Positions 6,101 through 11,986 of a stretch of DNA of 64,000 bases are shown here, in pieces. The position numbers and the translations under genes are program-made. Below the pieces are notes generated by a model. It saw only the letters and a list, made by a program, of their open reading frames with translations, was not told the origin of the DNA and searched no databases. Where the stretch lies: positions 61,194,001 to 61,258,000 of the forward strand of contig OZ365109.1 of assembly GCA_977030845.1 (NCBI GenBank), in the 5' to 3' direction. This DNA is from Fimbriosthenelais zetlandica (Eukaryota). How positions within the stretch are numbered: the first letter of the stretch is position 1; every line of letters starts with the position of its first letter.

Positions 6101-7840
6101 GCAAGCCCTTGCCCAATTTCCCTGCATTTCCTTTTAGTTCCCAAGTAACCAAATAATAGACTGCCGAGAAAAATGTGACCAGAAACTCGTACCTTCCCTT
6201 TGCTGTCATTGAAGGTAACAGATTGGCTTGTTCCAGTGAAACAAAATGAGAAAGGTGCATAATAGCATATCCAGGGTACTTCCCTCCGTTGCCCCATCCC
6301 CCATTGCCTCCCGGGCCAGCCTTTCCGGCCTCAATTCCTTTTGTATATATCATCATGCTGAATTCTGGACTGCATAATTATGCTAAATGCCCGCGTTAAA
6401 ACAATTATGACTGGTCGTTGAAATCATGGCTAGTCAACTTTGGTAAATTAGACTTATTTAGACCTACTTATTCCCTCAATAGCTTAAATATAGTCAGTGT
6501 TTCTGGATGGAAATCTGCTTGAGAGGATCCCGAAAAAAATCATCCACAATTCATCCAAAGGGCATGCCACCACCAGTCTCTCCCCTCGGCCATTTCTATA
6601 TATTTAGGCCTACTTCTCTTTGAGGGTCGGTGAGAATTGGCAATATATACAGGGATGAGAGTAAGGTTAGGTGTCACTCCTACTTTCCTGTCTTCCCTTG
6701 TTGCTCCTTTAAGGCGGGTTACGATGAACCTACCCCCCTGTTGTCTCCTGCCTGTCATGGCAAACTTTAATCAAGATTTATGAACACCTCCTGCCGAGGC
6801 CAGCTCTGAGTAGGCACTGGCCTGGTTATCGCCTGAAGATTTTTTTTACCTACACGAGCTGCCAGTACTCAATCAAATTGTCTTCTTTTTAAGCCTTATG
6901 GCAGAGCCTTACTTATTAAGGAAATCAATATGCAGTGGAAGTGATCCTCCCTTCCCCTGCCATGGGTCTTGTAATTTATGCACTGTCAATTGGCATACCA
7001 TATTTTCTTAATGCGATAATTATAATAGTTCACAGAGACTTCTCCCTCGAAAACTCGGTTCAGTTTCTGGCATGTTGGGCCCAGTTGCCTTCAGATGAGA
7101 ATCACGTCCCTGTGGATTGGTTCACTATAGTTAATTTATAGCCAGCAATATTTAAGTTCATATTTTGTCCATATTTTGTTACAATAGGATGTCTCGATAT
7201 AAATTTGATCCATTATTAAACTAAAACATTCTCTTTCCAGAACACCGGGTCGATATAGATACACAAGGTCGTGACACAAGAATATCACTAGGGTTGGCAT
7301 TTGCTGTTTTTCTTCTCGAGTCTTCTTCACTGCAGCTTTGTGATGTTCGACTACACTGTTAGAAAACCTGTTAAAACTAAGTGACCGCCATTTAAAAACA
7401 CGCAATGTCACGTAGAATTCACATACCTAATTTAGCCAAGTGAAATTCTATTGTTCTCGGGGCGCATCTCTTAGCCCAATTTCGGCCATTTAAAATTACA
7501 CTTATGTCAATTGAAATTCAATGGCATTTCCTTGAATACTTGGCCTTCAATTAATTCAAACAAACATCAGGCTATGAATGCTACCCTACCTCATTAGCAT
7601 AAGCCCCCCCCCCCCGCCCCCCACCTGCCGGCCTCACCCCGCATAGGAGATTACAGTTAGTGTGGGCTGAGTTCACAACTGATGACCAAGTCCCACAAGC
7701 CCAGTTTTAGATGTGAAAAGCATAGTCAATTACATTGATTCACACTTTTGGGTGTGTGAATGATGTGCGAAATATATATTAACATGACTATAGAATAGAG
7801 GATATAGCTAGATGTGGGGCGAAATATGGGTCGCCCGTAA

Positions 7841-8366
7841 GGCCAAACAAAAAATACCTTTGTTTGGGGTAACATAAAAAAAAAATTTTCAGCAGGTAGG
7901 TCGGCACTAATTTTTTTTTTATTTTAAGATTTTATTCTGGAAAACCCTGGGTCGGCTGAATTAAATTTTTTTTTTATTATCTCTCACTTCCAGCCATTTT
8001 GACCGTCTGCCGCGTGTTAAAAGTAACAATAATTTGGATTGGAAGATGTCGCAGCGATTCAACCAATAGCAAAATGTGTAACAAATCAGGCCAGGTCAAA
8101 GGAAGTGACATTGGTCGCTTTTGGGGGAAACCCCAGCCGGTGGAGGGAAATCTTCTCCCGATTTAGGCCAAACAAAATGTTATTTTGGTTCAGATTCACA
8201 TAAAATTTAAGGAAAGCGGAGATTTCAATTATTCTGAGTACAGTCGGGGCTTTAGAATTTTTTTTTTGTCAAAAAACTGAATAAAATCCCGAAAACATTG
8301 ATTTTATGGGGTCTATTTTTTGGGTCGGTCGGAAAACCCCAAACACGGAAATTATTTTGTTTGGCC
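7841..8366. mobile_element. PIF/Harbinger (Tourist-like) MITE nested in the EnSpm-like element
   Basis: TIR GGCCAAACAAAA (7841) / TTTTGTTTGGCC (ends 8366); TAA TSD at 7838-40 and 8367-69. A second left-TIR copy lies at 8166, preceded by TTA. Confidence 0.8.
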
Positions 8367-8851
8367 TAATGTGCGAATTTGGGGTTAAGCTTTAATACAA
8401 GTTATTAGGTTATCACGGCCAATATCTTCCAATAATTTTGAGTAATAAGTATTTTACTGTCCATAAAATGCCGTTTAACAAGTGCAATGGATTTATAGAA
8501 TCAATTACTCCTTTAATTAAATCGAAATTTATGATTAGTTACACTAATGATACGGGTGAAAACAAGACAAATATTGGAGGAGGGATTAATATGACACCAT
8601 AATATTAGCTCCGCACCAAATATTTAGTCCTGGTCGTCTATTGGCTAAGCCTACAGAAAAATGATTTCCCTTTAAAATATAATGATCATACACGGGTGTT
8701 AAATATTAAATATTGCCTTTAAACCCGAGAAAATTGAGTATCTGCAAAGATGTTCCGTGTGTTTAATGTCGCTAAAACTATAAATTAACCTTTATTCTCC
8801 TCGGCGCTTCCAACGGCCATTTTCGAAATCGAACAGTTACAGCATGATATC

Positions 8852-10002
8852 ATGCCTACTTCAATGCGAAACTCATTCGTCATAACAGGTAAGTTTAAAA
8901 GAATATTTACTTTATTTATGGCCACATGTCCATAAAGTACCTTGATAAAATATCTACATTTGATGGCAAGTAATGAGGGAATATTGTCCAAGGGGGATTG
9001 AAGTCCGCTTGACCAGACCAGACAGGGTGATAGCCGGCCATGACGCCCGACAAACGGCCGGCTATATGGCTGACCAGACCCCGTAAACCTACTGGTCAAG
9101 GGCGTCCCTTTATCCCCTTAAACTCGCGGCATCAATGTATCAATTTAAGCTTTCTCACTTTTAATTTATAGCCCCATTTCATACATATTACAATATCGAC
9201 CTGTTATATGTTCCAGCCTCAAGAGAAGTTGCAAGGAATGTACATAAGTGGTATGAATATTCTTCTTGATGACTGCACATAACATGGTAAGTTGTTTGTT
9301 TTGACTTCTTTAAAACAGTTGTGAATTTACCTATGTGGAAATGGATTGAGTAAACCTTTAATAATGTTCACATTTATTTGAGGTCATGAAAGGTACTTTT
9401 GAAGTATGTAAAAAGGTGTTAATAAGTATTGGTGAATAATTAGGTCACGATACCACCTGTTACCATATGTTAACCCCCACCCATTTTGGAGGTGAGGCTT
9501 TCCGTGTAAGGTGTGAGGGGAAAATGCTTACTGTTAAATCCATATCCATCCATAGTCCATTTTTGTAAAAATGTTATGAATATATATGAATTAGTAAGGC
9601 GACTTTCCAGACAAATTACTTACACTTGTGTTCTTATTTCTATTATTTTAATTCAGATTAACGGTACGGATGTTTCGATGGTATCCAAAGTGTGATGTCA
9701 ATTCAATGGGCATCACTCATCAAGAAGGCACTGACACACATTACAGCGGTTACAGGTTAGTATATATTTGCTAATGATTCATTGACCAACATTATATTGA
9801 TTAGACATATTAATCATTATTATTCCCAAAGTTCTGAACCTTTTTTATTAAGATTAATATATTGTGTTATAACACCTCGTTTATTGTCTTTACAGAGTCC
9901 TCATGTAAAGGAAAGAATTCATCCCACACAAATCATTTGAAATGAGGCTGACCAAATCTGGAATACATCAAGTCGCCATGTAACACATGCTATTGGAATA
10001 CC
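8852..10002 (+). other. Chain of four exon-like segments inside the EnSpm-like element (non-coding or decayed)
   Basis: Donor ACAG|GTAAGT at 8888; exon 9217-9286 (TTCCAG| ... ATG|GTAAGT); exon 9657-9755 (TTAATTCAG| ... CAG|GTTAGT); exon 9896-10002 (GTCTTTACAG| ... ACC|GTATGT). The spliced frame from ATG 8852 contains five stops. Confidence 0.45.
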
Positions 10003-10439: not shown

Positions 10440-11000
10440 TGGGGTACATCTGTGTACATTTATCATCCATGATTAGGCTACTTCTCATCCTGTGACAATG
10501 CCTTAAGTTTTTGTGTAAACATGTTTTAGAGATATTAGATATTTTTGATATTTTTTACTTAGCTCTCTCGATCAGGCCATCAATTATTGTATATTTTGCG
10601 GTATTCACCATCCATGTTAATTATGTTTATTTTGTAGTAATACTTTACTTATTTTATATTTAGATTTGTGAGATATTTAATATTTTCTTGTGACGAAAGT
10701 TTCAGAATCTTGGGTGCACCTGTGTACATTTACCATTCATGATGATTATTTAACCATTCTGTGATAATGCTTACATTTTTTTTATATATTTAGATTTGTG
10801 AGATATTTAATATTGTGTGTCGATGAAAGTATCAACATTTTGGTACAATTGTGTCTATTTGTCATCCATGTCTATTTTGATTAGGCTTGTTTGCATTATG
10901 TGATAACGCTTTAATTATTCCATACATAGATTCCATTGTTATTTTTTGATGGATTATTTTGATTATTATCATGATTTCCATTGTGATAATGCATTAGATT
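10440..11000 (+). repeat. Diverged ~130-140 bp tandem repeat (about 4 units)
   Basis: Recurring motif g(g)tacatctgtgtacatttatcatccatga...tgtga(c/t)aa(t/c)gc at ~10441, ~10712 and ~10841, with a weaker unit near 10580. Confidence 0.55.
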
Positions 11001-11473
11001 TTTGTATATATATTCGAGGGATTATCGAATAAAAGTTGTTCATAATATTTCATATGTGCGTTTATTTAATTTTATAATTAGTGGTAAATTATTTGCAACC
11101 ATATTTAAGCACAAAATTAATAATATAAATATTTCAAAACTAAATGGCCCAGGCCCACCTAATCCTATAATTGGTACCGCCATTTATAATATAATTGGTA
11201 TAGCCAAGTGAAAAGAGGCTCTCCCTAATCCTATAATTGGTTTGGCCATTTAAGATTTAATTGGTGTCGCCAATTAAAAACACATGACATAGGTACTTGG
11301 CATTAGCATAGCCTTGCCTCAAAAATAATTGGCGGCCATTTATGTTAATTGGCAGAGGTAAAACGGACATCGGTAAATGGCTCATAAAAAGCTGTGGTCG
11401 CGCCAAGTGAAATCACCTGACATTGATGTAGTTCATTCTAACAGTGTACCTTAGATCTTCACCTCCATTTGTC

Positions 11474-11986
11474 ATGACGAGGAGGCTCATAGTTCTTCTC
11501 CTCCATTTTACTCTCTCCACTGCCTTTTCTTTCTTGCACACGGCTGAAAAAGCAGAGCAAAAACTAGCACAGACAATGAACAACTCCGATTACAACAGCA
11601 ACATCAACAGCTTTAGGCAAATGGAACAAAATTTATCAAGTTATGGTAATCTCAGTGACGGGACTATGTTAGCAGGTGGTGACACCTGGGATTTGGCTGT
11701 GACAGTCGGGGCCAATGTCTCCAAGGACGGCAATGGCAATCCACACGCATGGAAAACCATCCACCGGACATCGTCATATGCATTTGTCATAACCATGTTA
11801 AGTATTACAGTTGTCATGGCAACGATATTTACCCTCTTTGGACTATTTATGAAGGCAGAAGCACATAGTGACGAACATCATGATCACCATGGACCTGACA
11901 GGGGACATGACGGTTTACATGGCGGTATCATGGGTCATGAAGGCGCTGGTGGGTTCATGAAGGGAATTAACCCTGATGTTGAATAG
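11474..11986 (+). CDS. Orphan single-pass membrane protein (170 aa): signal-like N-terminus, N-glycosylated ectodomain, TM helix, His-rich tail
   Basis: MTRRLIVLLLHFTLSTAFS leader; sequons NNS, NLS, NLS, NVS; TM YAFVITMLSITVVMATIFTLFGLFM; tail HSDEHHDHHGPDRGHDGLHGGIMGHE; TAG at 11984-86; AATAAA at ~12019. Confidence 0.65.
   Translation: MTRRLIVLLLHFTLSTAFSFLHTAEKAEQKLAQTMNNSDYNSNINSFRQMEQNLSSYGNLSDGTMLAGGDTWDLAVTVGANVSKDGNGNPHAWKTIHRTSSYAFVITMLSITVVMATIFTLFGLFMKAEAHSDEHHDHHGPDRGHDGLHGGIMGHEGAGGFMKGINPDVE

What the first reader, a model, noticed from the sequence alone, without database searches (positions are those of the whole stretch)
7335..11986. EnSpm-like transposon appears to have rewired the 5' end of a host membrane-protein gene
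Seen: the element ends 27 bp upstream of ATG 11474. Removing it and one TA restores TTCTTCACTGCAG|CTTTGTG ATG TTC GAC TAC CTT AGA..., a natural acceptor (7335) plus an ATG (7343) in frame with the ORF (MFDYLRSSPPFV-MTRR...). The right TIR itself reads TTCATTCTAACAG, a usable acceptor at 11444, and the element contains four plus-strand exons. Known: CACTA/EnSpm elements can be spliced out or donate splice sites. Inference: the insertion landed in the first coding exon, and the gene is now expressed through a TIR-derived acceptor, possibly from a transposon-internal promoter and 5' UTR, using the second ATG. The in-frame join has a 1-in-3 chance probability on its own.
Basis: partly seen in the sequence, partly recalled or inferred. 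Interest (0 to 1): 0.75.

Follow-up and report, generated by a model that had tools for sequence, protein, structure and literature searches.

The report
Young transposon splitting a gene's start
A recently active cut-and-paste jumping gene sits four codons into the only copy of a small membrane-protein gene, cutting off its original start codon. This is an ordinary insertion mutation, and no RNA data were available to show whether the gene is still expressed through the transposon's end.

Summary
A 4,093-bp element (7354-11446) has perfect 11-bp inverted ends (CACTGTTAGAA) and a TA duplication. It ends 27 nt before ATG 11474. Removing it plus one TA joins ATG 7343 in frame to the ORF.

New evidence:
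- The family has at least 251 left and 382 right ends in this 447-Mb genome. Termini are often 100% identical, and 20 of 20 other full copies carry perfect 2-bp duplications (TA, TG, CA, AA). This fits the CACTA/Mirage/Chapaev (CMC) type, not Tc1/mariner. No transposase carrying these ends was found.
- The only relative with a full N-terminus (P0001) starts M-x4-RSSP. It aligns without gaps to the rebuilt MFDYLRSSP. ATG 7343 is therefore very probably the ancestral start, and the insertion lies in codon 4.
- Met13 (11474) still precedes a complete signal peptide, so the mature protein could be unchanged.
- This copy carries its own nested 526-bp MITE and at most 0.3% private changes.

The "rewiring" claim (TIR acceptor, internal promoter, four exons) could not be tested. 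No RNA run was listed, and the four runs that could be laid come from a relative. A TIR-to-TIR splice would leave +8 nt, which is out of frame.

The scan noted a similar exonic CACTA insertion elsewhere in this genome (s1-184602). Interest is low to moderate.

The parts
7311..7335 (+). Pyrimidine-rich acceptor-like site (…cactgcag|) 7 nt before ATG 7343. It may be the start of the coding exon.
   Evidence: Sequence. Pyrimidine fraction 0.73, the 93rd percentile of all AG sites in the window. No RNA evidence. The relative's contig L033 has a comparable ttttcag| 81 nt before its ATG.
7343..7353 (+). Severed 5' piece of the coding sequence: ancestral start codon plus codons 2-3 and the first two bases of codon 4 (ATG TTC GAC TA).
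   Evidence: It joins in frame to 11449 onward after excision. Its position matches the start of orthologue P0001. The flank 6950-7353 is single-copy in the genome.
7352..7353 (.). Target-site duplication TA, left copy.
   Evidence: All 20 other copies have perfect 2-bp duplications.
7354..11446 (+). Non-autonomous CACTA/CMC-type DNA transposon, 4,093 bp. It consists of a family body of about 3.57 kb plus a nested MITE.
   Evidence: Termini are 100% identical over 207 and 307 bp to at least 40 other copies. The body is 94-97% identical including gaps, with 0.4-1.4% substitutions, to 15 copies of about 3.64 kb. No ORF of 70 aa or more lies on the + strand.
7354..7364 (+). Left terminal inverted repeat CACTGTTAGAA.
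7365..7560 (+). Left subterminal region with repeated GCCATTTA (7387, 7485) and GCCAAGTGAAA (7435) motifs.
   Evidence: (D10, D11, D18).
7841..8366 (.). Nested 526-bp MITE with ends GGCCAAACAAAA / TTTTGTTTGGCC and a TAA duplication at 7838-7840 and 8367-8369 (PIF/Harbinger-like).
   Evidence: It is absent from all 20 other copies, which read ...CGCCCGTAATGTGCGA... across the site. The element/MITE junction is unique in the genome, while the MITE itself has over 500 candidate matches.
8846..10002 (+). Four segments bounded by consensus GT/AG signals (about 8846-8889, 9218-9288, 9657-9757, 9897-10002). They are non-coding, and the last donor has no partner inside the element.
   Evidence: Sequence. 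Stops in all three frames of the joined segments. Present in the family body. Unverified as exons.
11140..11435 (+). Right subterminal region with GCCATTTA-type motifs on both strands and GCCAAGTGAAA at 11203 and 11402.
   Evidence: (D2, D10).
11436..11446 (+). Right terminal inverted repeat TTCTAACAGTG. Together with the bases before it, it reads as an acceptor-like site, aacag|TG, at 11444|11445.
11447..11448 (.). Target-site duplication TA, right copy.
11449..11986 (+). Remainder of the coding exon: last base of codon 4 through the stop codon. It is intact.
   Evidence: Open frame. 54% identical to P0001 over 88% of its length. Colinear to the same stop.
11474..11986 (+). 170-codon ORF from the second in-frame ATG (Met13 of the ancestral protein). 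It encodes a signal peptide (MTRR followed by a hydrophobic core), an ectodomain, one transmembrane helix (about 11773-11844) and a His/Gly-rich tail.
   Evidence: hydrophobic maximum at residues 16-19 of the rebuilt protein, as in P0001. No Pfam family reaches its cut-off. Single copy in the genome.

Best explanation
A member of a young, very abundant family of non-autonomous cut-and-paste transposons has inserted at a TA inside codon 4 of a single-copy, single-coding-exon gene. The family has CACTA/Mirage/Chapaev-type ends, 5'-CACTG...CAGTG-3', and makes 2-bp target duplications. The gene encodes a small type-I membrane protein. These points are shown.

The insertion separates the ancestral start codon (7343), and whatever promoter and leader lie upstream, from the other 178 codons by 4.1 kb. 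Translation from the old ATG now runs into the element and stops after 13 codons.

The following is inferred. The allele is an ordinary exonic insertion mutation. Most likely it is a weakened or null allele that is too young to show decay, and it may be polymorphic in the species. It is unusually forgiving, because only the first 12 residues are lost. Those residues belong to the dispensable n-region of the signal peptide. An in-frame Met13 (11474) followed by RR and the intact hydrophobic core lies 27 nt past the element. Any transcript that reaches 11474 without an earlier productive ATG would therefore give the same mature protein. Whether such transcripts exist is unknown.
For: - Ends, duplication and coordinates.
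- Family size and youth: 251 left and 382 right ends. At least 40 copies have 100% identical termini. The nearest sampled copy differs at 0.42% of sites, and this copy has 10 private substitutions in 3.55 kb.
- Duplication length: 2 bp in 20 of 20 other copies (TA 12, TG 4, CA 3, AA 1).
- Coding-exon position: P0001 (MHTSFRSSP...) against the rebuilt MFDYLRSSP.... The alignment is gapless for 29 residues, M1 matches M1, RSSP is identical, and the 11-nt AGATCTTCACC lies at the same offset (+15) from the ATG.
- Position 13: P0001 has Ala where this gene has Met13, so the downstream ATG is not the conserved start.
- Read-through from ATG 7343 stops after 13 codons.
- The hydrophobic core lies at residues 16-27 in both proteins.
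- The gene and its left flank are single-copy, with no empty site in the assembly.
- The ORF is intact.
Against: - The N-terminal argument rests on one orthologue. The two other relatives are truncated gene calls, and L034 has an in-frame stop upstream.
- No same-species reads or RNA were available. Neither the zygosity of the insertion nor any transcript is known.
- The copy carries a private nested MITE, so it is not brand new. An intact ORF after some time could hint at continued use. With at most 0.3% divergence, however, only about one change would be expected in 510 nt, so this is uninformative.
- No autonomous element with these ends was found. The superfamily assignment therefore rests on structure only.
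Confidence: 0.7

Rival explanations
1. The gene is still expressed. Either the donor of an upstream non-coding exon now skips the 18-nt exon stub and the element and splices to the TIR-derived acceptor at 11444|11445. Or a promoter inside the element drives a leader whose last orphan donor (10002|10003) splices to that acceptor. Translation then starts at Met13 and yields the normal mature protein.
For: - The right end reads ...ttcattctaacag|TG with a pyrimidine at -3 and no AG in the 12 nt before it.
- No ATG lies between 11445 and 11474.
- Met13 has a purine at -3 and is followed by a complete signal peptide.
- Four consensus GT/AG-bounded segments lie on the same strand, and the last donor has no partner in the element.
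- Precedent: maize En/Spm termini contain splice sites that turn a dSpm insertion in the A2 gene into a novel intron (Menssen et al. 1990, as listed in the references of PMC4219821).
- The ORF is intact although the copy is old enough to have received its own MITE.
Against: - There is no RNA evidence of any kind.
- The acceptor is only average in pyrimidine content, at the 71st percentile.
- The four segments have no coding capacity and no shown promoter.
- Transcripts that start in the last 330 nt of the element would carry five upstream ATGs.
- The only GT in the left inverted repeat (ACT|GTTAGA) is a poor donor. Used with the TIR acceptor it leaves +8 nt and a frameshift.
- ORF intactness is uninformative at 0.3% divergence or less.
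Confidence: 0.25
2. The element lies in the 5'UTR, not the coding sequence. ATG 11474 has always been the start codon, and the in-frame ATG 7343 is a coincidence.
For: - MTRR followed by a hydrophobic core is a textbook signal peptide on its own.
- The frame match alone has a 1-in-3 chance.
- Only one orthologue speaks to the N-terminus.
Against: - The orthologue has no Met at the position of Met13 (it has Ala). It starts exactly at the position of ATG 7343, with RSSP conserved at residues 6-9 and an identical 11-nt stretch at the same offset from the ATG.
- There is no stop between 7343 and the ORF after excision.
Confidence: 0.08
3. The juxtaposition is an assembly artefact: a transposon copy wrongly placed or collapsed into this locus.
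For: The family has hundreds of near-identical copies, which can confuse assemblers.
Against: - There is a perfect TA duplication, and the flanks rebuild a conserved reading frame.
- The copy is individually distinct: a unique nested MITE junction and 10 private substitutions.
- The flanks are single-copy.
Confidence: 0.02

Closest known systems
Maize dSpm/I insertions in exons that are removed as introns (a2-m1, Menssen et al. 1990 EMBO J 9:3051, cited in PMC4219821; bz-m13, from my own knowledge: Kim et al. 1987 PNAS)
   Same: - A non-autonomous CACTA-type element sits inside a coding exon, in the same orientation as the gene.
- Its 3' inverted repeat ends in a pyrimidine run plus AG|TG, so it looks like a 3' splice site.
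- The downstream ORF is intact.
   Different: - This is an animal genome, with a 2-bp rather than a 3-bp duplication and no sequence similarity to En/Spm.
- No RNA evidence exists here.
- A TIR-to-TIR splice would be out of frame (+8 nt). Rescue would need the second ATG rather than restoration of the original frame.
CMC (CACTA-Mirage-Chapaev) superfamily of DDE transposons, animal EnSpm/Mirage-like non-autonomous elements
   Same: - Termini are 5'-CAC...GTG-3', the hallmark quoted in PMC4079192.
- The duplication is very short (2 bp).
- Repeated subterminal motifs occur at both ends.
- The genome holds about 28 loci of a CACTA-type transposase (weak Transposase_21 and DUF4218 matches).
I did not map that end myself.
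   Different: - No transposase-bearing copy with these particular ends was found.
- The two long copies examined contain foreign nested inserts instead.
- There is no sequence similarity to the transposase-bearing elements checked.
Tc1/mariner elements
   Same: A TA duplication at this locus and in 12 of 20 other copies.
   Different: - 8 of 20 copies have TG, CA or AA duplications, whereas Tc1/mariner integrates strictly at TA (my own knowledge).
- The CACTG ends and long subterminal repeat regions are of CACTA type.
   Same: Same genome, same kind of element, an exonic insertion whose excision restores the frame. It was judged an ordinary mutation.
   Different: - It is a different gene and a different element (2.8 kb).
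- Here an orthologue supports the coding status of the site, and a second in-frame ATG with an intact signal peptide follows the insertion.
- I did not re-examine that locus.

Membership tests
CMC (CACTA/Mirage/Chapaev) DNA transposon superfamily | Terminal inverted repeats with invariant 5'-CAC ... GTG-3' ends | tested here: met
   CACTGTTAGAA at 7354-7364 and its reverse complement at 11436-11446. The hallmark is as stated in PMC4079192.
CMC (CACTA/Mirage/Chapaev) DNA transposon superfamily | Short target-site duplication (2-4 bp depending on the lineage) | tested here: met
   A perfect 2-bp duplication here and in 20 of 20 other full copies (TA 12, TG 4, CA 3, AA 1). That 2 bp occurs in Mirage and animal EnSpm lineages is from my own knowledge. 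PMC4079192 gives 3-4 bp for Chapaev.
CMC (CACTA/Mirage/Chapaev) DNA transposon superfamily | Subterminal regions with repeated short motifs (presumed transposase-binding sites) | tested here: met
   GCCATTTA-type motifs occur 11 times, all but one within about 135 bp of the left end or 320 bp of the right end. GCCAAGTGAAA occurs 3 times.
CMC (CACTA/Mirage/Chapaev) DNA transposon superfamily | Mobilised by a DDE transposase of the CMC type carried by an autonomous element with the same ends | tested here: inconclusive
   - All size classes seen (3.3-6.1 kb) lack long ORFs.
- The 14.5-kb and 22.5-kb copies hold nested foreign DNA: a P-element-type transposase on the opposite strand, and a 1,746-aa zf-C2H2 ORF with no similarity to the CACTA-type transposases checked.
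- About 28 CACTA-type transposase loci exist. None lies next to the family's ends on contigs C1 or C10.
Tc1/mariner | Strict TA target-site duplication | tested here: not met
   8 of 20 copies have non-TA duplications.
Spliceable exonic CACTA insertion (maize a2-m1 / bz-m13 type) | Splice-site-like sequences in the element's termini | tested here: inconclusive
   An acceptor-like aacag|TG lies at the right end, of average strength (71st percentile). The only GT in the left inverted repeat is a poor donor (ACT|GTTAGA).
Spliceable exonic CACTA insertion (maize a2-m1 / bz-m13 type) | Transcripts in which the element is removed and a translatable mRNA results | not testable with these tools
   No RNA run was listed. 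The four runs laid are from a relative. In silico, a TIR-to-TIR splice leaves +8 nt and a 15-codon upstream ORF whose TGA overlaps ATG 11474.
PIF/Harbinger-type MITE (nested element 7841-8366) | 3-bp TWA duplication and short inverted ends, high copy number, no ORF | tested here: met
   TAA at 7838-7840 and 8367-8369; ends GGCCAAACAAAA / TTTTGTTTGGCC. More than 500 candidate matches in the genome. The transposase link was not tested.

The most novel reading that the evidence does not exclude
An animal CACTA-type element behaves like maize dSpm. Its inverted-repeat end serves as a 3' splice site in either orientation, so an insertion four codons into a secretory-protein gene is tolerated. The upstream leader, or a leader from the element's own GT/AG-bounded segments, splices to 11445. 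Translation restarts at Met13, and signal-peptide cleavage erases the difference. With hundreds of near-identical copies carrying an orphan donor and an exit acceptor, the family could be a genome-wide source of chimeric 5' ends.
Probability: 0.2. Interest if true: 0.55.

Novelty: new member of a known kind. Interest (0 to 1): 0.3.

Why it matters
As it stands this is a clean, well-documented example of an ordinary event. A currently or recently active DNA transposon family has hit the coding exon of a conserved lineage-restricted gene, at a spot where the damage may be masked by a second start codon and signal-peptide cleavage.

It is useful in three ways. It marks a highly active non-autonomous CMC-type family with 2-bp duplications and hundreds of identical ends in an invertebrate genome. 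It is a warning for gene annotation, because the model will start at Met13 or be missed. And it is a ready-made test case: if RNA data showed use of the TIR acceptor, it would extend the maize dSpm 'transposon as intron' mechanism to animals.

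Tried and rejected
- RNA evidence. Two run searches (kinds any and rna) listed no RNA holder.
- Reads. The only runs offered (X1-X4, organism A) were laid at 85% likeness. They cover only 11771-11905 (13 differences in 135 nt) and low-complexity bits of the element. No contig touches either junction or an empty site. They are a relative, not this species.
- Empty site or second allele in the assembly. There is no match to the 18-mer with up to 2 mismatches other than unrelated repeats. 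The ORF and the left flank are single-copy.
- More orthologues for the N-terminus. The word-index search with the ORF, the same search with P0001, and an exhaustive HMMER search gave only P0001 with a full N-terminus. L034 has a stop upstream of its call. The contig for P0003 could not be delivered.
- DNA similarity of upstream regions between L033 and the window: none beyond the coding core.
- Autonomous partner.
  - Pairing left and right ends on contig C1 gave sizes of 3.3-6.1 kb plus two long copies, both explained by nested foreign inserts.
  - PF02992 gave one weak locus. Its protein finds about 28 loci, none beside the family's ends where lists were complete.
  - The element shares no sequence with the C39 locus or with the 15-kb two-gene element noted earlier.
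- Coding capacity of the four GT/AG-bounded segments: none.
- Rfam families and tandem arrays in 6500-12500: none.
- Pfam on the host protein: nothing above cut-off.
- Rejected ideas:
  - Tc1/mariner, because of non-TA duplications.
  - Insertion in the 5'UTR, because of the orthologue's start.
  - In-frame removal by TIR-to-TIR splicing, because it leaves +8 nt.
  - Assembly artefact, because of the unique nested MITE and the private substitutions.

Full report
**1. What is in the sequence**

The stretch reads ...cactgcag(7335)ctttgtgATG(7343)TTCGACTA | CACTGTTAGAA... ...TTCTAACAGTG | TA CCTTAGATCTTCACCTCCATTTGTC ATG(11474).... The 11-nt ends at 7354-7364 and 11436-11446 are exact reverse complements. 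With the flanking TA on each side they form a 13-nt perfect inverted repeat (pair I23).

The element is therefore 7354-11446, or 4,093 bp, with a 2-bp TA target-site duplication. Its last base lies 27 nt before ATG 11474. Removing 7354-11448 gives an uninterrupted frame, MFDYLRSSPPFVMTRRLIV..., that runs to the stop at 11984-11986.

**2. It is a real, young, abundant transposon**

The window is part of a 447-Mb assembly in 79 contigs.

- The left-terminal 207 bp and the right-terminal 307 bp each find 40 scored matches at 99-100% identity, among about 400 candidates.
- The left 24-mer occurs 251 times and the right 24-mer 382 times. The backwards control patterns occur 0 times.
- I fetched 20 complete copies. 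Every one has a perfect 2-bp duplication: TA 12, TG 4, CA 3, AA 1.
- Copies fall into size classes of about 3.64 kb, 4.24 kb and 4.4-4.5 kb.
- Against 15 copies of the 3.64-kb class, this copy differs at 0.42-1.38% of aligned sites. It has 10 private substitutions in 3.55 kb, which is an upper bound because only 15 of several hundred copies were sampled.

**3. This copy carries a private nested insertion**

All other copies align to 7354-7840 and 8367-11446 and read ...CGCCCGTAATGTGCGA... across that point. Here a 526-bp MITE (7841-8366) sits there. Its ends are GGCCAAACAAAA / TTTTGTTTGGCC and it has a TAA duplication.

The element/MITE junction is unique in the genome, while the MITE alone has more than 500 candidate matches. 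So this copy has had time to be hit by a second active family, or it acquired the MITE before moving here. It is recent but not brand new.

**4. Classification**

Three features fit the CACTA-Mirage-Chapaev (CMC) superfamily:

- the 5'-CAC...GTG-3' ends, the hallmark quoted in PMC4079192;
- the 2-bp duplications;
- repeated subterminal motifs (GCCATTTA-type 11 times, GCCAAGTGAAA 3 times, nearly all close to the two ends).

Strict-TA Tc1/mariner is excluded, because 8 of 20 duplications are not TA.

I could not find an autonomous copy. The 14.5-kb and 22.5-kb copies keep the family's ends and TA duplications, but they owe their length to foreign inserts. One insert is a P-element-type transposase on the opposite strand (PF21787, PF21788, PF12017). 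The other is an 18.5-kb block inserted at a single breakpoint. It carries a 1,746-aa zf-C2H2 ORF with no similarity to the CACTA-type transposases checked.

The genome does encode about 28 loci of a CACTA-type transposase, with weak PF02992 and PF13960 matches. Near where that note places one end of the element, a CACTGTT... motif is preceded by TA. None of these loci shares sequence with this family, and none lies beside its ends where my lists were complete. Membership in CMC is therefore structural; the transposase criterion is open.

**5. The host gene and where the insertion sits in it**

The ORF 11474-11986 (170 aa) has a signal-peptide-like start, an ectodomain, one transmembrane helix and a His/Gly-rich tail. 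No Pfam family reaches its cut-off. It is single-copy in the genome, and so is the left flank.

Three relatives were found, and an exhaustive search added only distant family members. Only P0001 is complete at the N-terminus (177 aa, 54% identity, on the 1,042-nt Logan contig L033). It begins MHTSFRSSPLLQALGKSAVFILQLALTSA.... The rebuilt protein begins MFDYLRSSPPFVMTRRLIVLLLHFTLSTA....

- The global alignment is gapless over these 29 residues. M1 aligns to M1 and RSSP is identical at residues 6-9.
- At the DNA level, AGATCTTCACC lies at offset +15 from the ATG in both.
- P0001 has Ala where this gene has Met13.

The conserved start is therefore the upstream one, and ATG 7343 sits at exactly that codon.

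I conclude that the element interrupted codon 4 (TA|C) of the ancestral coding exon. The caveat is that this rests on one orthologue. L034 has a stop upstream of its call, and no further orthologue appeared.

**6. Consequences that can be read from the sequence**

- Translation from ATG 7343 into the element stops after 13 codons (MFDYTVRKPVKTK*).
- The hydrophobic core of the signal peptide is at residues 16-27 in both proteins. The 12 lost residues belong to its n-region.
- Met13 is followed by TRR and the intact core, and has G at -3. A protein started at Met13 should therefore be targeted and cleaved to the same mature protein. This is inference.
- No ATG lies between 11445 and 11474. The last 330 nt of the element hold five short upstream ORFs.
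- The TIR acceptor aacag|TG is formally usable but average: pyrimidine fraction 0.60, the 71st percentile of all AG sites in the window. The presumed native acceptor at 7335 scores 0.73, the 93rd percentile.
- The only GT in the left inverted repeat (ACT|GTTAGA) is a poor donor. Joined to 11445 it leaves 4 + 2 + 2 = 8 extra nt. That is a frameshift, giving a 15-codon upstream ORF whose TGA overlaps ATG 11474.
- The four GT/AG-bounded segments inside the element carry good consensus signals but no ORF. They belong to the family body, so they are not specific to this locus.

**7. What could not be tested**

No RNA run was listed. The four runs that were offered hold 5% of the sampled words. When laid at 85% likeness they cover only the conserved 135-nt transmembrane core, with 13 differences. 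They come from a relative, and they show neither the junctions nor an empty site.

No protein of this species for this gene is in the collections. No empty site or haplotig is in the assembly. Expression, zygosity and population frequency of the insertion are all unknown.

**8. Verdict**

Observation confirmed. Two parts stand: an 'EnSpm-like transposon' (on structural grounds) and 'landed in the first coding exon' (on orthologue evidence). The 'rewired' part (TIR acceptor, internal promoter, exons) is a reasonable hypothesis and remains untested. It has a well-known plant precedent: dSpm termini acting as splice sites in maize A2 (Menssen et al. 1990, listed in PMC4219821), and bz-m13 from my own knowledge.

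The default reading is an ordinary, recent exonic insertion allele that is probably impaired and perhaps polymorphic. Its damage could be masked by Met13 and signal-peptide cleavage. I did not re-examine that locus.

Novelty: a new member of a known kind. Interest: 0.3.

Noticed in passing
window 7841-8366: A 526-bp MITE with ends GGCCAAACAAAA/TTTTGTTTGGCC and a TAA duplication (PIF/Harbinger-like) is nested in the transposon. Its family has more than 500 candidate matches in the genome at 92-100% identity, so it is a second recently active family.
   Followed up: partly
L062:6240-7352 (+) and L063:251-976 (+) (G000:C1:11476190-11490835): A 14.5-kb copy of the same transposon family (TA duplication) contains, on the opposite strand, open frames matching P-element/THAP9-type transposase domains (PF21787 at E 4e-37, PF21788, PF12017, weak PF12596). 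This is probably a nested P-type element.
   Followed up: partly
L068:3001-8238 (-) (within G000:C1:28396118-28418746): A 22.5-kb copy of the family holds an 18.5-kb insert at a single breakpoint. The insert has an uninterrupted 1,746-aa ORF with an N-terminal C2H2 zinc finger and a weak C-terminal NADAR match. It shows no similarity to the CACTA-type transposases checked, and its identity is unknown.
   Followed up: partly
window 11814-11871 versus L033:641-698: The transmembrane-coding core is identical for about 58 consecutive nt, synonymous sites included, between this gene and a relative that is only 54% identical as protein. The ectodomain has diverged beyond DNA recognition. A more distant relative (L034) does vary at synonymous sites there.
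   Followed up: no
window 11474-11986; P0001-P0009: The host protein belongs to an unnamed family of small single-pass membrane proteins. They share a nearly invariant helix ending ...LFGLFMKAEAH / ...LFGLFMKAGA and have variable ectodomains rich in N-x-S/T sites. No Pfam family reaches its cut-off.
   Followed up: partly
L060:2429-9297 (G000:C1:62697928-62704796): The 15-kb CACTA-type element noted earlier contains the same pair of ORFs (254 aa and about 400 aa) three times in tandem. All copies of the ~400-aa ORF match the CACTA-type transposase of the C39 locus. This internal tandem duplication explains its 'swollen' size.
   Followed up: no
window 7603-7640: A C-rich tract (poly-C interrupted by G/A) inside the element attracted hundreds of short contigs from the relative's run X1 (summed depth over 4,000). 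This is low-complexity noise, not evidence that the element is present there.
   Followed up: no
window 10420-11010: The 3' third of the element holds degenerate direct repeats spaced about 130 and 270 bp apart (70-87% identity). They fall below the tandem-repeat finder's threshold.
   Followed up: no
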